Below are positions 7,443 through 64,000 of a stretch of 64,000 nt of DNA, in pieces. A program made the position numbers and the translations under genes. The stretch is from the sequence record MK817115.1; one strand, written 5' to 3'. Position 1 is the first letter of the stretch. Every line of letters starts with the position of its first letter. The notes under the pieces are model-generated. The model searched no databases and was not told where the DNA came from. It worked only from the letters and a program-made list of their open reading frames with translations.

Positions 7443-8017
7443 TGTGCATCCTCGAATTTAACAGGTACATGTTCATTAATGAAATTCTTAAGAGCCTGTA
7501 CTAAATCCTCTAATTCTTTTGTACTGTATTTTAAAATAGTTTTAAAGTGAATCAAATCTTTTCTTTCCATGATCTTTGGAATTTTATATGCTAACTCTAA
7601 ACAGCGTACAGTACTGGCATCATACAAAAGGTTTGCGTTGAACATTAGAACATTGTATTCATCAGATGAAATTTTATAATTATATGTATCAATCACTTCA
7701 TGTGTGTATAAATTCTTATACACAATTTTATTCTCACTGAAGTTTGAGCAAACACACAGATGATCGTTGTAAAATGAAGAACGATAATCTTGTTTACGTT
7801 GTACATCTGCTATGATTTGTAATACTGTATATTTTTCTTCAGAATCCAACTCAATGTTAGCATAACTGCTCGCAGTTTCAGATACAAGGATATTGATGTT
7901 ATATTTCTCATTAACTTTAATGTACTGGCGTGAGCCAGTATCAGGAATGAACTTAAAACAATGCTTCAGAAGTAATGTGACTTCTTTAATTAATTCAGTA
8001 CTCATAGATTCCTCCAA
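7439..8017 (-). CDS. hypothetical protein (variant FQxS motif)
   Basis: NVLMFNANLLYD. Confidence 0.8.
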   Translation of the reverse strand: MEESMSTELIKEVTLLLKHCFKFIPDTGSRQYIKVNEKYNINILVSETASSYANIELDSEEKYTVLQIIADVQRKQDYRSSFYNDHLCVCSNFSENKIVYKNLYTHEVIDTYNYKISSDEYNVLMFNANLLYDASTVRCLELAYKIPKIMERKDLIHFKTILKYSTKELEDLVQALKNFINEHVPVKFEDAQ

Positions 8018-8032
8018 CTCTAGTTAAAATCA

Positions 8033-56033: not shown

Positions 56034-56225
56034 TTACTTTCTATATATAAGCATTAAGATATAGTAGTACTGATTATACTGTACATTCTCTTTAATATTA
56101 TAAGGGTCTATAGCAATCTCGGTACATCTGTTAAATGCATATCTATTAAATGCCAGTGGAATTATAGATCTAATCCATACTTGTTCATTTTCTTTTAGTT
56201 TACTTATATAGAAGTTTTTATACAT
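56034..56225 (-). CDS. (H/Y)KE(F/Y)Y-family ~60 aa protein
   Basis: MYKNFY...LMLIYRK. Confidence 0.8.
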   Translation of the reverse strand: MYKNFYISKLKENEQVWIRSIIPLAFNRYAFNRCTEIAIDPYNIKENVQYNQYYYILMLIYRK

Positions 56226-56240
56226 AGTATTCTCTATTAA

Positions 56241-56423
56241 TTAATATGATAGTACTAGTGTTAGTACTGAGCACAATTGTTCTTTATAGTTCTTAGGGTA
56301 TATAGAATCTTTTATGCACTCATTGAAGTGCCATAGGTATAATCTTGGGTCGCATTCTTTATATATTCTTACGGGGACGAATGTTAGTTTTCTTATATAG
56401 AATTCTTTATGTTCTTTATTCAT
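56241..56423 (-). CDS. (H/Y)KE(F/Y)Y-family ~60 aa protein
   Basis: EHKEFY...FNECIKDS. Confidence 0.8.
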   Translation of the reverse strand: MNKEHKEFYIRKLTFVPVRIYKECDPRLYLWHFNECIKDSIYPKNYKEQLCSVLTLVLSY

Positions 56424-56424
56424 A

Positions 56425-56613
56425 TTAGTACCTGAATATAAGTAGGATTATGTTATAGTACTGGTTAGTACTGCAATGATTCTCTATACATCGATTAACA
56501 GTTATGGAATAGCTATATCTGGCGTAAGCATTATCCAGCGGGATTTTACATTGAGCACTTAGAGAAAGTACAGTAGGTAGTGTATTCAAATAGAAGTCTT
56601 TGTAATTATTCAT
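56425..56613 (-). CDS. (H/Y)KE(F/Y)Y-family ~60 aa protein
   Basis: YKDFY...ILLIFRY. Confidence 0.8.
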   Translation of the reverse strand: MNNYKDFYLNTLPTVLSLSAQCKIPLDNAYARYSYSITVNRCIENHCSTNQYYNIILLIFRY

Positions 56614-56815
56614 ACAGGAATAGTATACCTATGATACCTGAGTACAGGTTAGTACTGTTACCATCTTCGTTTGCGTTTAAAGTCATTTGAATACAATTAT
56701 TGTAGCATACTCTGCCGAAAAATGTATTAGTACTTAAAGGTGGAGTAGTCCTTAGAAACATTTGTTCTGAGGGGCTTATGTATTTGGAGTAGAATTCTTT
56801 ATGTTCTTTATTCAT
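56606..56815 (-). CDS. (H/Y)KE(F/Y)Y-family protein, close paralog of 59618..59827
   Basis: EHKEFYSKY...STNTFFGR..YNNCI. Confidence 0.85.
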   Translation of the reverse strand: MNKEHKEFYSKYISPSEQMFLRTTPPLSTNTFFGRVCYNNCIQMTLNANEDGNSTNLYSGIIGILFLYE

Positions 56816-56820
56816 ATTAG

Positions 56821-57006
56821 TTAGTGTCTGTATATAAGTAATAGTAAGAATACGTACTGCACATCTTCATCTTTAGTATTGAGTACTGTACGTATTGCGT
56901 CATTAAACAAGAATATAGTACTTGGGTCATGAGAATTTAAAGGGGTTCTGGGTACGGCATGTTTGTAGTTCCCTTTAACAAATTGTGTGTAGTATTCTCT
57001 ATGCAT
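56821..57006 (-). CDS. (H/Y)KE(F/Y)Y-family ~60 aa protein
   Basis: MHREYY...LLLIYRH. Confidence 0.8.
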   Translation of the reverse strand: MHREYYTQFVKGNYKHAVPRTPLNSHDPSTIFLFNDAIRTVLNTKDEDVQYVFLLLLIYRH

Positions 57007-57007
57007 A

Positions 57008-57193
57008 TTAGTACCTATATATTAGGGCGATAATGTAGTACAATTCATATGGAATGTAATTTGGGGTGATCGCACACTGTGTATGGTAAATGAATTGTTC
57101 GGTATTTTTCTTATCCTTGATATCTATTGGGATTAGTGGTATAAGCATTTGGGAGTTTAGATCGAGATGGCTTAAGTAGAATTCTTTATGCAT
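57008..57193 (-). CDS. (H/Y)KE(F/Y)Y-family ~60 aa protein
   Basis: MHKEFY...IALIYRY. Confidence 0.8.
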   Translation of the reverse strand: MHKEFYLSHLDLNSQMLIPLIPIDIKDKKNTEQFIYHTQCAITPNYIPYELYYIIALIYRY

Positions 57194-57202
57194 ATTGTTC
57201 TT

Positions 57203-57391
57203 TTAGAATACGAAAGCTAGGTACAGGGTATGATACAGTACTCGATGATAGCTGTCAAAATCTAGTATACATGCTTTAGTGCACATAGTAAAGTACACTT
57301 TATCGTTTTGTGCATTGATACCGCGAGGTTTATCTAATAGATTAGTACTGAGGTACATTGGGAAATATTTTGTGTAGTATTCTTTATGCAT
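57203..57391 (-). CDS. (H/Y)KE(F/Y)Y-family ~60 aa protein
   Basis: Start trimmed to MHKEYY. Confidence 0.8.
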   Translation of the reverse strand: MHKEYYTKYFPMYLSTNLLDKPRGINAQNDKVYFTMCTKACILDFDSYHRVLYHTLYLAFVF

Positions 57392-57392
57392 A

Positions 57393-57575
57393 TTAGTACC
57401 TGAATATAAGTAGGATAGTGTTATATAGCTGGTCATAACTACTACTATTTTCTATACTTCGTTCTATGCAGTTATTGAATCCCAGTACTGCCAAATCGTT
57501 ATCCATAGGGACTTTGTATCTGGCGTAGTGTTCAAAAATGCTGGGGAGAAATTGTGTGTAGTATTCTTTGTGCAT
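57393..57575 (-). CDS. (H/Y)KE(F/Y)Y-family ~60 aa protein
   Basis: MHKEYY...ILLIFRY. Confidence 0.8.
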   Translation of the reverse strand: MHKEYYTQFLPSIFEHYARYKVPMDNDLAVLGFNNCIERSIENSSSYDQLYNTILLIFRY

Positions 57576-57576
57576 A

Positions 57577-57762
57577 TTAGTACCTATATATTAGTAAAAG
57601 GATGTGATACAGTACTCGATTATAGTCTTCAATATATATCGAGGATTTAGTGCACTGAATGAAGTAGTCTTTTTCGTAGTTTTTTTCTATACCCAATGGT
57701 TCTGTTGGTACAAGGTGTTGGAGATACATTGGGAGTTTCTCTATGTAGTATTCTTTATACAT
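57577..57762 (-). CDS. (H/Y)KE(F/Y)Y-family ~60 aa protein
   Basis: MYKEYY...LLLIYRY. Confidence 0.8.
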   Translation of the reverse strand: MYKEYYIEKLPMYLQHLVPTEPLGIEKNYEKDYFIQCTKSSIYIEDYNRVLYHILLLIYRY

Positions 57763-57771
57763 ATATTATCC

Positions 57772-57972
57772 TTAGTACTGGAACGCAAGGTACAGGGTGT
57801 GGTAAAGTTGTACTTGATAATTGTTTTCATTAGCTTCTTCATTAAGTACTTGTTCAGTACATGTACGGAAGTAATCAGCTTCATATATACAGTCAATACC
57901 GCGAGGTTCATCTTCTAATAGATTTCCTTGTAGAAACTTTGGTAGTTCTTTTATGTAGAATTCTTTATACAT
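57772..57972 (-). CDS. (H/Y)KE(F/Y)Y-family ~60 aa protein
   Basis: Start trimmed to MYKEFY. Confidence 0.8.
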   Translation of the reverse strand: MYKEFYIKELPKFLQGNLLEDEPRGIDCIYEADYFRTCTEQVLNEEANENNYQVQLYHTLYLAFQY

Positions 57973-58636
57973 AGTTTGTAATATACGTAATGAGGTGATG
58001 CATTTTCTTATCAGTACTGATAATTTCCTGTACATGTTTTGTCAGATTGTACGCGTTTTTATAGAGTACTGGATTATCGATTACAGTACTGTACATGAAT
58101 AGTTCTTCTTCCTGTAGTTCTTTGTGTTCTAGTTCTTTGAGGAATTCTACAATTGATTTAGTTTCTTCTGTACGTTGTGCTTGCCAGAAGTGCATATTCT
58201 CGTGTACTTTTTTTGCACCTATACTGTATATACCACCCATTTGGAATTGTGCTGTATTGACATCGTGGGAGGTGTTACAATTCCCGAAGAAGTATGTATT
58301 CCCGAAGTATAGCATTAAAGTGCACGGGGTATTATCCAACTGCATATGGATGATGAAGGATGCGTTCTTTAGTACCTTTGTGCTCGTATTAGTACTCAAT
58401 ACTTTTAAATCAGTATTATAGATATTCATATAATGAACAGCTATATTATTTTTCTTCATGTACAATCCCAGGTTCTTTGATACGTTAACTCCATTTGTAC
58501 TGGATTTTTCCTTTTTATTTCGTTTCTTTAGTACATTCGGGTGATACGTATATGCAGATGTAACTGATTCTGCCTGAATACTATTGAGGTACTTAAAGTG
58601 CTTAAGGTATTGTTTGCTGTGTGCATTAAGTTTCAT
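57965..58636 (-). CDS. FQxS-family-like protein (outlier)
   Basis: EEELFMYSTVID. Confidence 0.8.
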   Translation of the reverse strand: MKLNAHSKQYLKHFKYLNSIQAESVTSAYTYHPNVLKKRNKKEKSSTNGVNVSKNLGLYMKKNNIAVHYMNIYNTDLKVLSTNTSTKVLKNASFIIHMQLDNTPCTLMLYFGNTYFFGNCNTSHDVNTAQFQMGGIYSIGAKKVHENMHFWQAQRTEETKSIVEFLKELEHKELQEEELFMYSTVIDNPVLYKNAYNLTKHVQEIISTDKKMHHLITYITNYV

Positions 58637-58646
58637 TTGGTTTCCT

Positions 58647-58826
58647 TTATATAGATGCCAGGGCGAGGATTTCCCTGTAGGGATTATCTTGTGTTAGTAC
58701 AGCATAAATGCAGTTATTGAGATTAATATTTTTAGTACTTTTTGTTCCTAGTTTGTAGTACTTCACGAAGGTGTCGTACATGAAACGGTCTTTTATGGTT
58801 ATACGTTCTCTATAGAATTGTTGCAT
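58647..58826 (-). CDS. (H/Y)KE(F/Y)Y-family protein (59 aa, below cutoff)
   Basis: Hand-translated MQQFYRERIT...NNCIYAVLT...YREILALASI. Confidence 0.7.
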   Translation of the reverse strand: MQQFYRERITIKDRFMYDTFVKYYKLGTKSTKNINLNNCIYAVLTQDNPYREILALASI

Positions 58827-58834
58827 AGTATTCC

Positions 58835-59017
58835 TTAAATAGCGATTAGTTTCATTACTTCTCTGTATGTGTACTTTTCGTTTTGTGCATCTCTTGTGAC
58901 GACATATAGGAAGGTGTGTTTATCTTTTTTGTTCCCGCAATTGTAGAAAATATTGAACTTATTGAAGTTGAATCTTTCGGCGTGTTGTAGTTTAGTTAAA
59001 TAGAATTCTATGTTCAT
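58835..59017 (-). CDS. (H/Y)KE(F/Y)Y-family ~60 aa protein
   Basis: MNIEFY...YTYREVMKLI. Confidence 0.8.
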   Translation of the reverse strand: MNIEFYLTKLQHAERFNFNKFNIFYNCGNKKDKHTFLYVVTRDAQNEKYTYREVMKLIAI

Positions 59018-59025
59018 TTTCTTCC

Positions 59026-59211
59026 TTACATTTCAATAAGTTTCAGTACTGCTCGGTACGTGTACTTAGTTGTCAGTGCTTCTTTAATAGAAATACAGAA
59101 GTAATGTTGTTTGTCTCTTATACTGCCGCGTTTGTAGTACCACACATGGGAGTTGTGACTGTACTTGTCTCTGTCGGATAGTTGTTGGTAGTAGTAGCTT
59201 ATATGATTCAT
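59026..59211 (-). CDS. (H/Y)KE(F/Y)Y-family ~60 aa protein
   Basis: HISYY...YTYRAVLKLI. Confidence 0.8.
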   Translation of the reverse strand: MNHISYYYQQLSDRDKYSHNSHVWYYKRGSIRDKQHYFCISIKEALTTKYTYRAVLKLIEM

Positions 59212-59420
59212 TATAATGTAATTAGCCTTACTATATTAAAGTACTCGGTCCCTGGTGTACCTTGTAGTATATTACGCACGACATTTTTTTGGTGCTGGAT
59301 GATTGCTGAAGGTGCGGTTCTTTTTAGTTTTTTTAAAGTACTGAATTCTTGTTTAAGTATGAACTGTACATCTTTAGGGAGAATATCTATGTAGTACTGA
59401 TGAATGTTTGTAGTTTTCAT
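59211..59420 (-). CDS. (H/Y)KE(F/Y)Y-family-like protein
   Basis: IHQYYIDILP...VVRNILQG..YFNIVRLI. Confidence 0.8.
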   Translation of the reverse strand: MKTTNIHQYYIDILPKDVQFILKQEFSTLKKLKRTAPSAIIQHQKNVVRNILQGTPGTEYFNIVRLITL

Positions 59421-59430
59421 ATAGCACCTT

Positions 59431-59625
59431 TTAGAACTTAAAGATGAGGTTCAGGATAGAGCGGTACTTAGTTTCAGGGAACTGATGTTCTATTGCATAA
59501 CGTGTCGCCATCCTGAAATCGTAATTGTAATATAGATTATCCTTTCTCATAGGTGGTGCTAAAGAGAATGATAGCTGGTCTTGCTTGTGTAGTTTACTAC
59601 CATAGAAATCTTTATGATTATTCAT
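59431..59625 (-). CDS. (H/Y)KE(F/Y)Y-family ~60 aa protein
   Basis: HKDFY...YRSILNLIFKF. Confidence 0.8.
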   Translation of the reverse strand: MNNHKDFYGSKLHKQDQLSFSLAPPMRKDNLYYNYDFRMATRYAIEHQFPETKYRSILNLIFKF

Positions 59626-59827
59626 AGAAGTAGATTAGTCCTATTAAACCTGAGTACATAATATTTTTGTTATTGCATTCGATTGCTTCTAGAGTACTAC
59701 GTATACAATTATTAAAGCAATCTCTACCGAAGTGAGTATTGGTACTTACAGGTGATACACTCCTTAGAAACAATTGTTCTTCGTTGCTAAGGTATTTGGT
59801 GTAGAATTCTTTATGTTCAGTATTCAT
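59618..59827 (-). CDS. (H/Y)KE(F/Y)Y-family protein, close paralog of 56606..56815
   Basis: EHKEFYTKY...STNTHFGR..FNNCI. Confidence 0.85.
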   Translation of the reverse strand: MNTEHKEFYTKYLSNEEQLFLRSVSPVSTNTHFGRDCFNNCIRSTLEAIECNNKNIMYSGLIGLIYFYE

Positions 59828-59828
59828 A

Positions 59829-60032
59829 TTAGTACTCGATTAAAAGGGCAAGGATATAATAGTATTGCATACTTTCTGCCCCTTGTAAAGCATTTCTTAT
59901 GATATTATTCCTGTACGAGTTCAGGAGTTTAGGACAACGTTTGTAGTGTATAATAGTATTTTGTGTATACAGTAGGCTTTCTCGTAGACCTTTTGTTGGT
60001 AGTGCATCGATGTAGTACTGTTCGATATTCAT
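59829..60032 (-). CDS. (H/Y)KE(F/Y)Y-family-like protein
   Basis: IEQYYIDALP...IIRNALQG. Confidence 0.8.
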   Translation of the reverse strand: MNIEQYYIDALPTKGLRESLLYTQNTIIHYKRCPKLLNSYRNNIIRNALQGAESMQYYYILALLIEY

Positions 60033-60256
60033 ATAGATAGCAGTACTAAGATTTTTGATAATTGTTTATTGCTATCCCCGCAGATGTTGCTGTGTAAAAT
60101 ACTCACAATGAGGGTATCAATTGCATTGTTCATCATAAGGGTGCATCCTGGACTATTATAATTTTTTAGCTCAATTAGCCACGAACTATCCGAGAGAAAC
60201 TCCCCGTACTCTAGTTCATTTAGAGTATTGAGGTAGTACTTAAGAGTATTTGTCAT
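60029..60256 (-). CDS. (H/Y)KE(F/Y)Y-family-like protein
   Basis: LKYYLNTL...NNAIDTL; AGGAG RBS. Confidence 0.75.
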   Translation of the reverse strand: MTNTLKYYLNTLNELEYGEFLSDSSWLIELKNYNSPGCTLMMNNAIDTLIVSILHSNICGDSNKQLSKILVLLSI

Positions 60257-60281: not shown

Positions 60282-60310
60282 ATAGTACAACAGTACTGAA
60301 AGGATGTCAA
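60282..60310 (-). promoter_or_regulatory. sigma70 promoter driving the 56-60 kb array
   Basis: TTGACA-17-TACTAT, AGTACT in spacer. Confidence 0.7.
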
Positions 60311-60358
60311 GGGTTTTCTTTATGGGGTAAATATGATATAATGAATAAGGAGGGATTT

Positions 60359-61507
60359 ATGTTACCTTTTGCAAGAATGATTAAGTACGGGAATATTGCC
60401 CCTGGTGATGATGGACGTTTTAAAATATATTCCAGTGATTCCATGTATCTTCATGATACTTATACTGATAAGTTGTATGCATCTTCTGCGACGAATTGGG
60501 GTACTGGTACAGGTGTAGCATCGAGTAAATTTATTCTTTGTGCGGAGAATGTTAAACGAGTTCTATTGGAAGATAACAGTAGTGATTGTCAATTGTACGA
60601 AGAGAAAGGTACGGGAAAAGTTTTTATCACTGGCAACACGAAGGCATTCACTGGTGTAACTGATAGAAAAACTTTGTGGACGGACTGTACTACATGGATA
60701 ACATCAGGTGGTATTAATGTTTCTGATATAAAATACATGAGTAGTTTTTATGATATGAAGGTGAATTTGATAACAAACGATGGTACATTGTATTGTTGTG
60801 GAGCTAACAATATATCGAACATATCATCATTTGGTGATGGCACAAACATTAATTCTTTTAACACATTCAAAAGAGTAGATACTATAACTTCGGTTAAAAA
60901 GGCAGTTGGTAACATTTATTTGCGAGAAGATAATACTTTATGGGGTTGTGGTTTTAACTATTACTACCAGTTGGGTACGGGTAATCAAACTTCTATTACT
61001 GGGGTGACGATGATTTCTTCGGATGTTATAGATTTTAATGTAAGTTATCAGAGTACATTTTTTATCAAATCGGATAATAATTTGTACGCTTGTGGTAAAC
61101 AGTTCGGTGCACAATATGGGAACGAATTTGGTACAGGTGGTACTTCTACATCTACAGATATACAATATAAAACTCCGACATTATTGAGTTCAGGAGTTTA
61201 TACTCTATATACTTGTGTTGGTAACATGGCATCACATATTGTCAAAGCAGATGAAGTTCTATATGCTTCTGGAACGAATGGGTTTGGGCAATTAGGTGTT
61301 GGTAATAATAATAATCAGTACTCCTATACTCCTTCTTATACTTCTTTTAATAGTTCGTGTGATTTGGTACGCAGTCCATCTGGATCACTTATACTTACGG
61401 ATACTGGAAAATTATATTATTGTGGCATTGCAATAGTAGTAATGGGTGGTATTTCTGGACAGAACGTTCTTAATTATACAGAAGTAGATATGTCATTTAT
61501 ACAATGA
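60359..61507 (+). CDS. RCC1/BLIP-II-like beta-propeller protein
   Basis: LWGCGFNYYYQLGTGN and LYASGTNGFGQLGVGN repeats; start at MLPFARM after AAGGAGG. Confidence 0.85.
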   Translation: MLPFARMIKYGNIAPGDDGRFKIYSSDSMYLHDTYTDKLYASSATNWGTGTGVASSKFILCAENVKRVLLEDNSSDCQLYEEKGTGKVFITGNTKAFTGVTDRKTLWTDCTTWITSGGINVSDIKYMSSFYDMKVNLITNDGTLYCCGANNISNISSFGDGTNINSFNTFKRVDTITSVKKAVGNIYLREDNTLWGCGFNYYYQLGTGNQTSITGVTMISSDVIDFNVSYQSTFFIKSDNNLYACGKQFGAQYGNEFGTGGTSTSTDIQYKTPTLLSSGVYTLYTCVGNMASHIVKADEVLYASGTNGFGQLGVGNNNNQYSYTPSYTSFNSSCDLVRSPSGSLILTDTGKLYYCGIAIVVMGGISGQNVLNYTEVDMSFIQ

Positions 61508-61515
61508 ATTAATAT

Positions 61516-61579
61516 GCCAGTACTTGATACTGGCTTTTCTTTTTGTATTAAATATAGTATAATGAATAAAGGAGGAATT
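61516..61579 (+). promoter_or_regulatory. terminator-promoter-RBS cassette, copy 1
   Basis: GCCAGTA-CTTGA-TACTGGC-TTTTCTTTTT-GTATTAAATATAGTATAATGAATAAAGGAGG. Confidence 0.85.
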
Positions 61580-62722
61580 ATGTTACCTTTTGCAAGAATG
61601 GTTAAGTACGGGAATATTGCACCTGCACAAATCGGTAGATATAAAATATACAGTTCATCTTCTTCACTATTTTTATTGGATACCCAAAAACACAATTTGT
61701 ACAGTACATCGAACATTAATTATACTAGTGGTACAGGTAATGTTGAGCCTAAATTTGTGTTAAGTGCAACTAATGTTAAAAGATTATTACTATCTGATAA
61801 TAGTTGTGCAATGCAAATATATGAAGATATGAATGGGCGTGCAGCGATGTGTGGCACAAGAACTGCATATAGTGGGGTTGCAAATGATAATGTACTGGTA
61901 TGGACGGATTGCACTACATGGTTCACAAATGTAGGGTTGAATGTATCAGATATTCAGTACATGTCTGGTTTTTATAATCTGAAACTAAACATAGTTATGA
62001 ATAATGGTGATTTGTGGTGTAGTGGGAAAAACAACACTACTACTATGTCATCATTTGGTAATAGCACAAATATCGATTCATTCAATCAGTTTACCAAAAT
62101 AACAACAATATCAAATGTTATTAAAGCCACCGGGAATATATACTTATGTGCAGATAATACTTTATGGGGATGTGGTTTTAACTCTTACTATCAGTTAGGG
62201 ACAGGTAATCAAACATCCAGTATTAATTTGATTATGATGGCTTCTAATGTTATCGACTGTAATGTTGGTCTTCAAAATACTTATTACTTGACTAATAATA
62301 AAGAACTTTATGGATGTGGTACACAATTTGGTACAACTTACGGGAATGAATTTGGAACAGGAAGGCAGGGAACATCAATACAATATAAGACTCCTACTAT
62401 AATTTTCACAAATGCAGATGGTCTGGCTGTTTGTGTCGGTAATATGTCTACTCATGTTATTCAATATGATAAAGTTTTTAGTTCTGGTAATAATGCCCTT
62501 GCACAGTTGGGTGTAGGCAACCGTGACAATGTGTACACATATACACAATCATTTGATAATTTCAAAATGGATTCTTCTATAGTACGTGCAAACGTTGGAA
62601 CATTGATAATGACAGCGGACAATAAGTTATATTACAGTGGGAGAAATGATGTTGTTATGGGTGGAACAAGCACACAATACACGACGGTTTTCAGTGAAGT
62701 TAATATGTCATTTATACAATGA
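61580..62722 (+). CDS. RCC1/BLIP-II-like beta-propeller protein
   Basis: Close paralog of 60359..61507; start trimmed to MLPFARM. Confidence 0.85.
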   Translation: MLPFARMVKYGNIAPAQIGRYKIYSSSSSLFLLDTQKHNLYSTSNINYTSGTGNVEPKFVLSATNVKRLLLSDNSCAMQIYEDMNGRAAMCGTRTAYSGVANDNVLVWTDCTTWFTNVGLNVSDIQYMSGFYNLKLNIVMNNGDLWCSGKNNTTTMSSFGNSTNIDSFNQFTKITTISNVIKATGNIYLCADNTLWGCGFNSYYQLGTGNQTSSINLIMMASNVIDCNVGLQNTYYLTNNKELYGCGTQFGTTYGNEFGTGRQGTSIQYKTPTIIFTNADGLAVCVGNMSTHVIQYDKVFSSGNNALAQLGVGNRDNVYTYTQSFDNFKMDSSIVRANVGTLIMTADNKLYYSGRNDVVMGGTSTQYTTVFSEVNMSFIQ

Positions 62723-62728
62723 ATTAAT

Positions 62729-62794
62729 GCCAGTACTTGATACTGGCTTTTCTTTTTTGTATTAAATATAGTATAATGAATAAAGGAGGGAATT
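62729..62794 (+). promoter_or_regulatory. terminator-promoter-RBS cassette, copy 2
   Basis: Same as copy 1 apart from T/G-tract length. Confidence 0.85.
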
Positions 62795-63937
62795 ATGTTA
62801 CCTTTTGCAAGAATGGTTAAGTACGGAAATGAAGCACCAGAACCAAAACCTCTATTTAAAAATAGATTACAAGCAAATTATAATACTCGTTTTTATTTGC
62901 ATGTTAATGGTGACTTGTACTGGTATGGTTCATCTTCATTTGGACAAGGTGGTAATGGTTCATTACAATCATCCACCGTATGGACCCGTGTGAATAATAA
63001 TATTGAACGTTACTGGGGTGGTGTTCTTGGTTCCATTGCCATTAAGAATGATGGAACTATTTGGTTCACAGGTGCTAGTATAGTAATGCCACAAATCGGA
63101 ACAAATACAAATGGGGTTTGGATTGATGTAACCCAGTACTTCACTGATTTTGGTGTCAGTGCTGATGATATTGATGGTATTGCTGTTGGACAGAATTTGC
63201 GTGTATTTTTGAAAAATGGAAAATGGTTCTACTGTGGTGCTGGCGAGGGTGGTGTATTTGGTAACGCATCAACAGCTAATGTCACATCGTTCAGATACAG
63301 CACTATAGAAAATGTTAAAAGTTATGGCTGTTCTTTGCTCAGTACTGGGTTAGTTCTTGATGATGGTTCCTATTGGTATGCAGGAAATACTGTTGCTCCT
63401 GGTAGTACAACAACATCAAATATATTAAGTTTTACAAAAGACAATACGATCACCAATGCTATACAAGCTGTAAATACATACCGTACTTCATATATATTTC
63501 TTAATGATGGTTCAGTGAAGGTTGCTTCACCAAATGCATATGGTCAAGCTGGTGTAGGTAGAGTATCAGCAGTACCAATGAGTACATTAATTCCCAATTT
63601 ATCATTCCAAGGTGAAATAGAGTTGGTGGGTGGTTTATCCAACAACGAAGGGAATGGATGTGTTGTTAAAAATAATAATAAGTTATATACTTGTGGTCGA
63701 AATACCTATGGTGCATGTGGTGTTAATCAAACATCCGAAAATATACTAACTTTCACCGAAATGGTTCTTGATGCATTAGAAGGAAGACGAATTTCAGGCT
63801 TCGTAATTGATAATTTCTATTCAATGATAATTGATGAAAATAACAATTTGTATATGAGTGGTTTGGCTGAACTTGGAAATGTTCCAGCCGTGAGAGTTCC
63901 AACCAGAGTCCCCGATTCCCTTCTACCGTGGAAATAA
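62795..63937 (+). CDS. RCC1/BLIP-II-like beta-propeller protein (more divergent)
   Basis: LYWYGSSSFGQGGNG, LYTCGRNTYGACGVN; MLPFARMVKYGN start. Confidence 0.85.
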   Translation: MLPFARMVKYGNEAPEPKPLFKNRLQANYNTRFYLHVNGDLYWYGSSSFGQGGNGSLQSSTVWTRVNNNIERYWGGVLGSIAIKNDGTIWFTGASIVMPQIGTNTNGVWIDVTQYFTDFGVSADDIDGIAVGQNLRVFLKNGKWFYCGAGEGGVFGNASTANVTSFRYSTIENVKSYGCSLLSTGLVLDDGSYWYAGNTVAPGSTTTSNILSFTKDNTITNAIQAVNTYRTSYIFLNDGSVKVASPNAYGQAGVGRVSAVPMSTLIPNLSFQGEIELVGGLSNNEGNGCVVKNNNKLYTCGRNTYGACGVNQTSENILTFTEMVLDALEGRRISGFVIDNFYSMIIDENNNLYMSGLAELGNVPAVRVPTRVPDSLLPWK

Positions 63938-63945
63938 TGTAATAT

Positions 63946-64000
63946 GCCAGTACTTGATGCTGGCTTTTCTTTTTTGTATTAAATATAGTATAATGAATAA
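63946..64000 (+). promoter_or_regulatory. terminator-promoter cassette, copy 3 (next gene lies beyond the window)
   Basis: Same cassette with one A>G change giving a U-G wobble in the stem. Confidence 0.85.

What the first reader, a model, noticed from the sequence alone, without database searches (positions are those of the whole stretch)
60330..64000. RCC1-like propeller array with a constant 12-aa N-terminal tag and a cloned regulatory cassette
Seen: three ~380-aa propellers all start MLPFARM(I/V)KYGN and then diverge. Each is followed by the same ~65-bp terminator-promoter-RBS cassette, and a fourth unit begins at the window edge. Upstream of each gene is TAAATA-N3-TATAAT with no good -35. 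Established: T4 late promoters use TATAAATA. Inference: monocistronic, possibly late-expressed, interchangeable binding proteins (fibre/adhesin or inhibitor repertoire) docked through the tag and shuffled via the identical cassettes.
Basis: partly seen in the sequence, partly recalled or inferred. Interest (0 to 1): 0.7.

Follow-up and report, generated by a model that had tools for sequence, protein, structure and literature searches.

The report
Tagged virion propeller genes in swappable cassettes
A giant E. coli phage carries a row of about 13 genes for different binding-type proteins that all begin with the same 12 amino acids and sit in near-identical terminator-promoter cassettes; the proteins are found in phage particles, and related phages hold different sets in different orders, so this looks like a plug-in repertoire of particle-borne binding modules.

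Summary
The window is the end of the Escherichia phage vB_EcoM_phAPEC6 record (Asteriusvirus). Three RCC1-like propeller genes (60359-61507, 61580-62722, 62795-63937) start MLPFARM(I/V)KYGN and then diverge to 21-52% identity. Each is followed by a 72-nt hairpin, T-run, TAAATA-N3-TATAAT and AGGAGG cassette. The "fourth unit" is a 2,423-bp record overlap repeating unit 2.

The whole array has 13 tagged genes plus one decayed unit, and the tag occurs nowhere else in the genome. Published virion mass spectrometry found 8 of the 10 distinct annotated units.

- **Tag:** it is conserved across phage genera with free synonymous change. It sits on four folds (RCC1 and Kelch propellers, ConA-like lectin, Gly-rich) and is disordered in the AlphaFold model.
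- **Promoter:** TAAATA is this genome's own virion-gene upstream motif (26 of 37 genes).
- **Shuffling:** four relatives carry different unit sets and orders, and every homology-block boundary lies in the cassette-plus-tag block.

Best reading: late, single-gene, swappable units encoding binding modules addressed to the virion by the tag. This combines T4 PeSL-like cassettes with the short docking peptides of branched receptor-binding proteins. Where the proteins sit in the particle, and whether the tag docks them, is not shown. It is a new variant of known kinds.

The parts
60328..60358 (+). Promoter-like core and ribosome-binding site of unit 1: TAAATA 60328-60333, TATAAT 60337-60342, AGGAGG 60348-60353. 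There is no upstream hairpin, because this is the first unit of the array.
60359..61507 (+). Unit 1 (type A, gp549), 382 aa. N-terminal tag at 60359-60394, a short linker, then an RCC1-like propeller.
   Evidence: Found in virions by published MS (4 peptides).
61508..61579 (+). Cassette 1: hairpin 61516-61534, T-run, TAAATA 61549-61554, TATAAT 61558-61563, AGGAGG 61570-61575.
61580..62722 (+). Unit 2 (type M, gp550), 380 aa. Tag at 61580-61615, then an RCC1-like propeller. It shares 52% identity and the same C-terminal end with unit 1.
   Evidence: Not among the MS-detected proteins. Absent from 121Q, PBECO4 and G17. Covered at 96% in phage A4.
62723..62794 (+). Cassette 2: hairpin 62729-62747, T-run, TAAATA 62763-62768, TATAAT 62772-62777, AGGAGG 62784-62789.
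62795..63937 (+). Unit 3 (type D, gp551), 380 aa. Tag at 62795-62830, a Pro-rich linker, then a seven-bladed RCC1-like propeller.
   Evidence: AlphaFold2 pLDDT 92 with residues 1-13 below 50. Foldseek TM 0.78 to UVR8. Found in virions by MS (5 peptides).
63938..64000 (+). Cassette 3, cut by the window end: hairpin 63946-63964, TAAATA 63980-63985, TATAAT 63989-63994. In the record it runs into a 100% identical second copy of units 2 and 3 (record overlap). In the non-redundant genome it precedes unit type B.
60282..60310 (-). Context only: a sigma-70-like promoter (TTGACA, 17 nt, TACTAT) pointing away from the array, towards the row of about 60-aa paralogues on the minus strand.

Best explanation
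The region is the start of a roughly 16-kb array of 13 intact single-gene units plus one decayed unit in jumbo coliphage phAPEC6.

**Transcription.** Each unit is a self-contained expression module. An intrinsic terminator (7-8 bp GC-rich hairpin plus T-run) closes the upstream unit. The genus's late-type promoter core TAAATA follows, with a TATAAT 3 nt downstream, then a strong AGGAGG site and the gene. The promoter is presumably read by host RNA polymerase carrying the phage's annotated late sigma factor. That step, and late timing, are inferred.

**Protein.** Each product has three parts:
- a 12-residue N-terminal tag (M-L-P-F-[AG]-R-M-x-[KN]-Y-G-N) that is predicted disordered;
- a short linker, often proline-rich;
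- a compact beta-rich binding-type module. This is usually a seven-bladed RCC1-like propeller. One unit here is glycine-rich, and relatives also use Kelch propellers and ConA-like lectin folds.

**Function.** The tag acts as a shared address that brings these unrelated modules into the virion. Virion presence is shown by published proteomics. Docking through the tag is inferred. I favour an exposed position, as accessory adhesin or ligand-binding heads on the particle's fibres or surface, over packaging inside the head.

**Evolution.** The roughly 110-bp block from hairpin to codon 12 is identical between units. It serves as the crossover site through which whole units are gained, lost, replaced and reordered between related phages. 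Each module brings its own promoter, terminator and address.
For: **Anatomy**
- Searches give the cassette and hairpins.
- The cassette precedes 10 of 13 units. Unit 1 has the promoter and SD without a hairpin. Two units follow their neighbour without a cassette.

**Restriction to the array**
- The tag and the cassette occur nowhere else in the 350-kb genome.

**Virion presence (published MS)**
- phAPEC6: gp003, 005, 006, 007, 009, 010, 549 and 551, which is 8 of the 10 distinct annotated units.
- GAP32_001 in GAP32.
- Tagged CBB_548, CBB_549 and CBB_551 are annotated 'structural protein' in the CBB record; I read the tag on CBB_548-550 only, because CBB_551 is cut at the locus start.
- W70_237-239, RCC1-like proteins carrying a different shared tag, in a Vequintavirinae phage.

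**The tag is selected as a peptide**
- It is conserved in Salmonella phage Munch, Erwinia phage Hallingskeid, GAP32, CBB and Xanthomonas phage XaC1.
- In Munch and Hallingskeid the synonymous codons vary freely, and many units have no cassette.
- It is kept on the two phAPEC6 units that lack a cassette.

**The tag is not part of the fold**
- AlphaFold2 gives pLDDT below 50 for residues 1-13 and above 88 from about residue 21 on.
- It heads four unrelated body types.

**Late promoter**
- TAAATA lies at -80 to -16 of 26 of 37 virion or morphogenesis genes, against 5.7 +/- 2.2 in shuffles and a genome density of 0.021 per 65 nt.
- TAAATA-N3-TATAAT also precedes the virion genes gp077 and gp274c.
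- The literature predicts ATAAATA as the late motif in CBB and GAP32.

**Shuffling**
- Unit-type maps differ:
  - phAPEC6: A M D B N O C E F H G I J
  - 121Q: A D B K C E P F G I
  - PBECO4: L B K A C F Q R
  - G17: S L B T A D C E H U G J
- All 28 homology-block boundaries inside the array lie -110 to +55 nt from a unit start codon, a zone that is 15% of the array length.
- dS between the same two phages ranges from 0.006 to 0.39 from unit to unit.
- The tag variant MMNYGN follows the neighbourhood, not the body type.
- Bodies are maintained genes, with dN/dS of 0.03-0.44 where it could be computed.

**Outside rather than inside**
- The folds are typical ligand binders.
- RCC1-like propellers match proteins annotated as Pseudomonas phage tail fibres, one with a T7 tail-fibre N-terminal domain.
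- The 11 full-length propellers have pI 5.1-7.6; the Gly-rich unit (8.8) and the short unit G (9.2) are more basic.
- There is no conserved glutamate after the tag.
Against: - No experiment places these proteins on the particle or shows that the tag matters.
- MS peptide counts are low (1-5).
- The same MS table lists thymidylate synthase, a RecA-like protein and an SSB. Detection is therefore not proof of a structural role.
- gp550 and gp002 were not detected.
- No transcript data exist. The TATAAT could equally serve host sigma-70 without a -35, which would give early or constitutive expression.
- The annotated late sigma factor gave no Pfam hit.
- No T4gp10-like docking domain was found in six large virion proteins.
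- CBB has tail whiskers but no RCC1 gene, so the propellers are not the hairs themselves.
- The boundary statistic is inflated. Any shared cassette extends BLAST blocks to its far edge, and the boundaries are not independent.
Confidence: 0.6

Rival explanations
1. Internal or ejected proteins. The tag would be a capsid-targeting sequence of the kind T4 uses for its internal proteins. It would load the propellers and lectin-like modules into the prohead. They would then travel with the DNA into the cell and act there, for example as a variable repertoire of inhibitors of host defence proteins.
For: - A short shared N-terminal peptide on unrelated proteins, in a locus that varies between close relatives. 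From my own knowledge, this is how T4 internal-protein loci look.
- phAPEC6 has an inner body whose proteins are unassigned. Its authors suggested the RCC1-like proteins as candidates.
- Low-abundance MS signals fit minor packaged proteins.
- Propellers are good protein-protein interaction scaffolds.
Against: - There is no conserved glutamate or other fixed residue after the tag that could serve a T4-type prohead protease. The first Glu lies anywhere from residue 13 to 140.
- The linker is proline-rich and variable.
- The 11 full-length propellers are near-neutral to acidic, so they are not DNA-binding by charge.
- The folds (RCC1, Kelch, ConA-like) are typical extracellular ligand binders, and RCC1-like propellers match proteins annotated as tail fibres in other phages.
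- None of this is decisive.
Confidence: 0.2
2. The tag has no function as a peptide. On this view it is conserved only because the first 36 coding bases belong to the regulatory and recombination cassette, as a translation-initiation region or a conversion tract.
For: - In phAPEC6 the tag codons are almost invariant even at synonymous sites. TTA, CCT, TTT and AGA are each 13 of 13.
- Tag variants spread between neighbouring units, as expected for gene conversion.
Against: - In Munch and Hallingskeid the same residues are kept while codons vary freely: CCA/CCG/CCT, TTT/TTC, AGA/AGG/CGT, TAT/TAC and four Gly codons.
- Most of their units are translationally coupled with no cassette.
- Two phAPEC6 units keep the tag without a cassette.
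- The tag is conserved across genera whose bodies are only 22-40% identical.
- A second, different tag plays the same part in Vequintavirinae.
Confidence: 0.05
3. These are DNA or chromosome condensation proteins, as the database names say. They would organise the packaged genome or the host nucleoid.
For: - Annotation as 'regulator of chromosome condensation' or 'DNA condensation protein' in many records.
- The suggestion in the phAPEC6 paper.
Against: - The name comes only from the RCC1 repeat fold. The best structural matches are UVR8, HERC and RPGR RCC1-like domains, which have unrelated functions.
- The 11 full-length propellers have pI 5.1-7.6.
- The same tag heads lectin-like, Kelch and glycine-rich proteins.
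Confidence: 0.03

Closest known systems
PeSL (promoter-early stem-loop) mobile regulatory cassettes of T4-type phages (Arbiol et al. 2010, PMC2839356; Comeau et al. 2014, PMC4122927)
   Same: - A conserved composite of about 100 bp lies between a stop codon and the next start codon: a stem-loop terminator, a promoter and a Shine-Dalgarno site.
- It is repeated many times in a hyperplastic region.
- It flanks genes that differ between close relatives.
- It is proposed to be the crossover site for modular shuffling, so that each gene carries its own promoter and terminator.
- Here, unit gain, loss and reordering are likewise bounded by the cassettes.
   Different: - PeSL promoters match the sigma-70 consensus with a -35 box and act early. 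This cassette has no -35 and carries the phage's late-type TAAATA core.
- Here the stem-loop is a plain upstream intrinsic terminator with a T-run.
- Here the conserved block runs 36 nt into the coding sequence and encodes a functional peptide.
- The flanked genes are one protein class found in virions, not assorted ORFans.
- Mini-circles were not and could not be tested.
Short conserved N-terminal docking peptides of branched receptor-binding-protein systems (K1E / K1-5 / SP6, KP32, KP34 and others; Latka et al. 2019, PMC6872550; tested in PMC13352976)
   Same: - A group-specific N-terminal peptide of 7-11 or more residues heads otherwise unrelated virion proteins.
- It attaches them to a common anchor, so specificity modules can be exchanged.
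- Here a 12-residue lineage-specific tag heads unrelated virion-associated binding modules.
- A different tag does the same in Vequintavirinae.
   Different: - The known cases are trimeric beta-helix tailspikes or depolymerases, one to a few per phage, docking on a T4gp10-like domain.
- Here there are 13-16 paralogues per genome, built from propeller or lectin folds.
- No T4gp10-like partner was found.
- Neither docking nor a role in host recognition is shown.
Capsid-targeting sequence of T4 internal proteins
   Same: A short shared N-terminal peptide on unrelated proteins from a locus that is hypervariable among relatives. This comparison rests on my own knowledge; no T4 relative came back from any search.
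   Different: - No conserved protease site follows the tag.
- The folds suggest external ligand binding.
- An internal location is untested.
RCC1-like domain proteins (UVR8, HERC1/2 RLDs, RPGR, RCC1)
   Same: Seven-bladed RCC1-type propeller. The alignment profile hits UVR8 at E = 6.5e-34, and Foldseek gives TM 0.78.
   Different: - Sequence identity to these structures is only 12-18%.
- There is no reason to expect Ran-GEF or chromatin functions.
- The phage proteins add a tag and a linker and are particle-associated.

Membership tests
RCC1-like repeat beta-propeller (Pfam RCC1 / RCC1_2 / RLD) | RCC1 repeat matches above the curated gathering score | tested here: met
   
- PF13540: 36.4, 26.3 and 28.6 bits for units 1-3, against a cut-off of 22.
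- PF00415: 34.6 and 26.3 bits for units 1 and 2, against 21.7. Unit 3 scores 16, below the cut-off.
RCC1-like repeat beta-propeller (Pfam RCC1 / RCC1_2 / RLD) | Seven-bladed propeller fold | tested here: met
   The AlphaFold2 model of unit 3 has pLDDT 92.3 and pTM 0.89. Foldseek gives TM 0.76-0.79 to UVR8 and about 0.71 to HERC2 and RCC1. This is a predicted structure, not a solved one.
RCC1-like repeat beta-propeller (Pfam RCC1 / RCC1_2 / RLD) | Chromatin or Ran-related activity, the source of the name 'chromosome condensation' | not testable with these tools
   Only the fold is shared. A pI of 5.1-7.6 for the full-length propellers gives no support.
PeSL-type mobile regulatory cassette | Composite of stem-loop, promoter and SD between a stop codon and the next start codon, repeated in a variable region | tested here: met
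   There are 10 full copies plus a hairpin-less one in about 16 kb, and none elsewhere in the genome.
PeSL-type mobile regulatory cassette | Sigma-70 consensus early promoter with -35 and -10 boxes | tested here: not met
   The sigma-70 scan finds no -35 / -10 pair at the cassettes. The conserved core is TAAATA, shared with virion genes.
PeSL-type mobile regulatory cassette | Insertions, deletions and replacements between close relatives are bounded by the cassettes | tested here: met
   (28 of 28 boundaries). Unit-to-unit dS differs more than 50-fold between the same genomes.
PeSL-type mobile regulatory cassette | Excised mini-circles formed by recombination between flanking cassettes | not testable with these tools
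   This needs reads or DNA from infected cells.
Conserved N-terminal docking peptide of branched RBP systems | Short, lineage-specific N-terminal peptide shared by otherwise unrelated proteins | tested here: met
   The peptide heads four body folds. A second tag does the same in Vequintavirinae.
Conserved N-terminal docking peptide of branched RBP systems | The proteins are virion components | tested here: met
   From published MS, not from my own test: phAPEC6, GAP32_001 and W70_237-239. CBB record annotations agree.
Conserved N-terminal docking peptide of branched RBP systems | A partner protein with a T4gp10-like branching or docking domain | tested here: inconclusive
   A Pfam scan of six large virion proteins (gp244, 245, 248, 256, 314c, 323c) found only a T4 gp15-like domain in gp248. 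Pfam may simply miss such a domain.
Conserved N-terminal docking peptide of branched RBP systems | Bodies are receptor-binding tailspikes or fibres that set host range | not testable with these tools
   The bodies are propellers and lectin-like folds, not beta-helix spikes. The only link to fibres is fold matches to proteins annotated as Pseudomonas phage tail fibres.
T4-type capsid-targeting sequence of internal proteins | Prohead-protease cleavage site directly after the targeting peptide | tested here: not met
   No conserved residue follows the tag. The first Glu lies at residue 13 to 140, depending on the unit. The requirement for Glu comes from my own knowledge of T4-type proteases.
T4-type capsid-targeting sequence of internal proteins | Location inside the head | not testable with these tools
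   No localisation data were found.
Late (phage sigma-dependent) promoter of Rak2-like phages | A/T-rich -10-type core shared with virion genes, without a -35 | tested here: met
   TAAATA is upstream of 26 of 37 virion genes against 5.7 in shuffles. It is invariant in all cassettes. ATAAATA was predicted as the late motif in CBB and GAP32.
Late (phage sigma-dependent) promoter of Rak2-like phages | Late timing and dependence on the phage late sigma factor | not testable with these tools
   gp237c is annotated as the late sigma factor but gave no Pfam hit. No transcriptome was found.

The most novel reading that the evidence does not exclude
Large myoviruses may use a general plug-in display system. 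A short, lineage-specific N-terminal address peptide would load a changing set of a dozen or more unrelated ligand-binding modules onto shared sites of the particle. The peptide is M-[LIF]-P-F-x-R-...-Y-G-N in Rak2-like jumbo phages and M-x-E-M-[LM]-x-[LV]-[GS] in Vequintavirinae. The modules are RCC1 and Kelch propellers, ConA-like lectins and glycine-rich domains. The shared sites might be the unassigned 'hairy' fibres. Each module would be carried on a self-sufficient late promoter-terminator cassette that doubles as the recombination site. The result would be a combinatorial adhesin coat that can be re-dealt between co-infecting phages.
Probability: 0.4. Interest if true: 0.75.

Novelty: new variant of a known kind. 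Interest (0 to 1): 0.55.

Why it matters
**What was already in print.** The multi-copy 'RCC1 / DNA condensation' genes of Asteriusvirus phages, and their detection in virions, are published. They were read as possible DNA organisers.

**What this analysis adds.**
- The genes are tied together by a selected 12-residue address peptide.
- That peptide also heads lectin-like, Kelch and glycine-rich virion proteins in several genera.
- An unrelated myovirus subfamily uses a different peptide in the same way.
- The units sit in late-type promoter-terminator cassettes that bound every exchange seen between relatives.

**Why that is useful.**
- It gives a concrete, testable model for how giant phages diversify accessory particle proteins.
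- It gives a handle for identifying the unassigned fibres or decoration sites of these phages.
- It extends the PeSL idea from early ORFans to late virion genes.
- It corrects a misleading annotation.
- It flags three unannotated genes and a 2.4-kb redundancy in the reference record.

Tried and rejected
1. **Sigma-70 promoter.** The scan scores no -35 / -10 pair at the cassettes. I rejected it as the main reading but cannot exclude -10-only use.
2. **The tag as the propeller's closing strand.** Rejected. The model leaves residues 1-13 disordered, and the tag also heads non-propeller folds.
3. **A genuine fourth unit or tandem duplication at the window edge.** Rejected in favour of a record overlap. 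121Q has no such duplication.
4. **Scan of IMG/VR for the tag DNA.** It returned only 121Q itself, so nothing was gained.
5. **Pfam scan of six large virion proteins for a T4gp10-like docking domain.** Nothing useful came back.
6. **Pfam on the annotated late sigma factor and on the glycine-rich unit.** No hits.
7. **Peptide-level MS data for the N-terminus.** No supplementary files are held for the paper.
8. **In-register identity of the upstream cassettes**. It was misleading because of 1-2-nt indels. I replaced it with the MAFFT alignment.
9. **The hairs themselves being RCC1 proteins.** Unlikely, because CBB has whiskers but no RCC1 gene.
10. **Literature search for an existing description of the tag or cassette.** None was found in the library. 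The library holds open-access papers only.

Full report
**What the window is**

[quoted passage not shown] The window is record positions 288,599-352,598. The three ORFs are annotated gp549, gp550 and gp551. Two are named 'regulator of chromosome condensation' and one 'hypothetical protein'.

**Check of the observation**

- The three genes run 60359-61507, 61580-62722 and 62795-63937.
- They begin MLPFARMIKYGN, MLPFARMVKYGN and MLPFARMVKYGN.
- They match Pfam RCC1 / RCC1_2 above the curated cut-offs.
- Their bodies share 24-52% identity or none that BLASTP detects.
- Between them lie 72-nt spacers that are almost identical. Each holds a 7-bp hairpin, a T-run, TAAATA, three bases, TATAAT, AGGAGG and the ATG.
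- The hairpins fold at -10 kcal/mol, with z-scores of -3.5 to -4.3 against shuffles.
- The consensus scan lists the hairpins as terminator-like. It finds no sigma-70 -35 / -10 pair at the cassettes.

**The fourth unit**

The 'fourth unit' needs a correction. The final 2,423 bp of the record are identical to its first 2,423 bp. The authors state a genome of 350,175 bp, exactly 2,423 less than the record. Phage 121Q has no such duplication. The unit starting at the window edge is therefore unit 2 again, most likely an untrimmed circular overlap.

**The whole array**

Reading on into the record (locus L002) gives 13 non-redundant ORFs with the tag, plus a fourteenth unit that is broken and has a decayed tag.

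- Twelve are RCC1-like.
- One (type E, 244 aa) is glycine-rich. It has no Pfam match and belongs to PHROG 4474.
- One RCC1 unit (type G, gp007) is short, at 269 aa. It has the same length in 121Q and G17 and was detected in virions.
- The full cassette precedes 10 units. Unit 1 has the promoter and SD only. Two units follow their neighbour with only a ribosome-binding site.
- A six-frame scan of the whole record, read locus by locus, finds the tag nowhere else. The hairpin-promoter cassette is also confined to the array.
- Three units (B, C and E) have no CDS in the record. gp004 is an out-of-frame ORF inside E.

**Are the proteins in the particle?**

The phAPEC6 paper lists 62 virion-associated proteins by ESI-MS/MS. 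Among them are gp003, gp005, gp006, gp007, gp009, gp010, gp549 and gp551, with 1-5 unique peptides each. That is 8 of the 10 distinct annotated units. gp550 and gp002 were not seen, and the three unannotated units could not be.

The same table also lists thymidylate synthase, a RecA-like protein and an SSB. Detection alone is therefore weak evidence. Independent studies agree, however:
- GAP32_001, an RCC1-like protein, was found by MS in GAP32.
- In the CBB record, CBB_548, CBB_549 and CBB_551 are annotated 'structural protein'. I read the tag on CBB_548, CBB_549 and CBB_550. CBB_550 is annotated kelch-like, and CBB_551 is cut at the locus start.
- All three RCC1-like paralogues of the Vequintavirinae phage W70 were found in virions.

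**What the tag is**

1. *It is selected as a peptide.* The same motif heads the array genes of several phages:
   - Salmonella phage Munch: MIPF.RIL.YGN
   - Erwinia phage Hallingskeid: MIPFARMIQYGN
   - GAP32: MLPFSRIIQYGN
   - CBB: MLPFPRL.EY[GA]N
   - Xanthomonas phage XaC1, in weaker form: MFPIPIIS.YGN

   It also heads many 50%-cluster representatives from the exhaustive protein search. In Munch and Hallingskeid the residues are kept while codons vary freely, and most units are translationally coupled without any cassette.
2. *In phAPEC6 the codons themselves are nearly invariant.* DNA identity is 93% over codons 1-12, against 44% and 29% over the next two blocks of 12 codons. The variant MMNYGN follows the neighbourhood rather than the body type. 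Conversion with the cassette therefore acts on top of peptide selection.
3. *The tag is not part of the fold.* The AlphaFold2 model of gp551 (pLDDT 92.3, pTM 0.89) leaves residues 1-13 below pLDDT 50. The propeller starts at about residue 21-25.
4. *The tag heads four unrelated body types*:
   - RCC1 propellers (PHROG 4219);
   - a Kelch propeller (Hallingskeid CDS0073, CBB_550);
   - ConA / laminin-G-like proteins of PHROG 6011, 'virion structural protein' (GAP32_002, Munch_540 and CBB_549, the last by tblastn similarity to GAP32_002);
   - the glycine-rich type E.
5. *A second tag exists in another lineage.* In Vequintavirinae the same RCC1 and ConA-like bodies carry M-x-E-M-[LM]-x-[LV]-[GS]. 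Examples are W70_237-239, A5-4 genes 119-121, 4MG gp182 and CR3 gp255.

A short, lineage-specific N-terminal peptide on interchangeable virion-associated modules is best explained as an address for incorporation.

**What the bodies are**

The profile of the family hits UVR8, HERC1/2 and RPGR RCC1-like domains at E = 1e-27 to 1e-34. The model superposes on UVR8 at TM 0.78.

Among predicted viral structures, the fold recurs in two Pseudomonas phage proteins annotated as tail fibres, one of them carrying a T7 tail-fibre N-terminal domain.

The 11 full-length propellers have pI 5.1-7.6; the Gly-rich unit E and the short unit G are more basic, at 8.8 and 9.2. None has a fixed residue after the tag. 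Nothing supports a DNA-condensing role, and the name reflects only the repeat family.

Orthologous bodies in different phages evolve under purifying selection, with dN/dS of 0.03-0.44 where it could be computed. They are working genes.

**The promoter**

I did not use the T4 letters quoted in the finding. I read the 100 nt upstream of 37 virion and morphogenesis genes of this genome.

- TAAATA lies between -80 and -16 in 26 of them. Shuffles give 5.7 +/- 2.2.
- The hexamer is rare in the genome overall, at 0.021 per 65 nt per strand.
- The CBB paper reached the motif ATAAATA for structural genes of CBB and GAP32 by MEME.
- TAAATA is invariant in every cassette, including that of the decayed unit, which has lost the TATAAT.
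- TAAATA-N3-TATAAT also precedes the virion genes gp077 and gp274c.
- The distance from TAAATA to the ATG in the cassettes is 25-26 nt, at the short end of the range for other late genes. Most of those lie at 29-58 nt, with one at 17.
- The phage encodes an annotated late sigma factor (gp237c) and a sigma-70-like protein (gp066c).

Late expression is therefore the likeliest reading, but no transcript data exist. The downstream TATAAT might add sigma-70-dependent expression.

**Shuffling**

I clustered unit bodies at 85% identity or more. This gives 21 types in four phages, and the maps differ:

| Phage | Unit types in order |
|---|---|
| phAPEC6 | A M D B N O C E F H G I J |
| 121Q | A D B K C E P F G I |
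| PBECO4 | L B K A C F Q R |
| G17 | S L B T A D C E H U G J |

- Pairwise BLAST blocks at 88% identity or more start and stop at -110 to +55 nt from a unit start codon in all 28 cases inside the array. That zone is 15% of the array length.
- The statistic is inflated by the shared cassette itself, so I treat it as consistent with cassette-bounded exchange, not as proof.
- Stronger evidence comes from synonymous divergence between the same two genomes. For phAPEC6 against 121Q, dS is 0.006-0.008 for units D, E and F, but 0.22 for A and 0.39 for C. The units have separate histories.

This matches the PeSL model of T4-type phages, in which a conserved promoter-plus-stem-loop block of about 100 bp serves as the crossover site.

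**Where the proteins sit**

This is open. The phAPEC6 particle has unassigned fibres at each capsid hexamer and at three rings on the sheath, and also an inner body.

- For an exposed position: the folds, the fold matches to annotated tail fibres, the proline-rich linkers and the lack of a protease site.
- Limits on that view: CBB has whiskers without any RCC1 gene, so the propellers are not the hairs themselves. CBB does have tagged lectin-like and Kelch proteins.
- The docking-peptide systems of K1-5 / SP6 / KP32-type phages are the nearest precedent for a 7-11-residue anchor. I found no T4gp10-like partner.
- The internal-protein reading (rival 1) stays at about 0.2.

**Novelty**

These points are already in print: many RCC1-like genes in 121Q, PBECO4 and phAPEC6; their detection in virions; and their variation between close relatives.

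I found no description of the shared tag, of its spread to other folds and lineages, of the cassette, or of cassette-bounded exchange. The library holds open-access papers only.

I therefore rate this a new variant of two known kinds, PeSL-like cassettes and docking-peptide modularity. Interest is moderate.

Noticed in passing
window 56034-60256, minus strand: A second paralogue array. At least 16 tandem ORFs of 59-75 aa share a loose motif (HKEFY ... FN..I ... Y..IL.LIYRY; alignment A3). A 223-aa ORF at 57965-58636 interrupts them. They are transcribed away from the RCC1 array, from a sigma-70-like promoter at 60310-60282. The same row is present in 121Q (genes 249-265) and G17. Function is unknown; these are probably early genes.
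   Followed up: partly
window 61578-64000 and L002:1-2423 (record MK817115.1, ends): The last 2,423 bp of the deposited record repeat its first 2,423 bp exactly. The paper's genome length is shorter by exactly that amount. gp550 / gp551 and the unannotated ORF at L002:3-1145 / gp001 are the same two genes listed twice.
   Followed up: yes
L002:2434-3543, L002:6063-7253, L002:7325-8059: Three intact tagged array genes (types B, C and the glycine-rich E) have no CDS in the phAPEC6 record. gp004 (7716-8018) is an out-of-frame ORF inside E. The 2020 virion proteomics could therefore not have detected them.
   Followed up: partly
L002:10640-11829 and L002:14190-14700: Two units look damaged. Type G is a short form (269 aa) followed by a non-coding remnant. 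It is conserved in that state in 121Q and G17 and was still detected in virions. The last unit of the array has a decayed tag and is in pieces in all four phages compared (at least one break each).
   Followed up: partly
L016 (A5-4), L022 (W70), L019 (4MG), L020 (CR3): Vequintavirinae phages carry RCC1-like and ConA-like virion proteins homologous to the jumbo-phage bodies, but with their own shared N-terminal tag (MLEM[LM]NL, MEEMLLVG, MNEMLMLG).
   Followed up: partly
whole phAPEC6 record (L002-L008 and window): The hexamer TAAATA is strongly depleted genome-wide: 0.021 per 65 nt per strand, against about 0.15 expected in shuffled upstream regions. Yet it sits upstream of most virion genes, as if spurious late promoters were avoided.
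   Followed up: partly
L012 (Salmonella phage Munch), L013 (Erwinia phage Hallingskeid): In these relatives most array genes are translationally coupled, with overlapping or abutting stop and start codons. Only every third or fourth gene has a terminator-TAAATA cassette. The one-gene-one-cassette layout is therefore particular to Asteriusvirus.
   Followed up: partly
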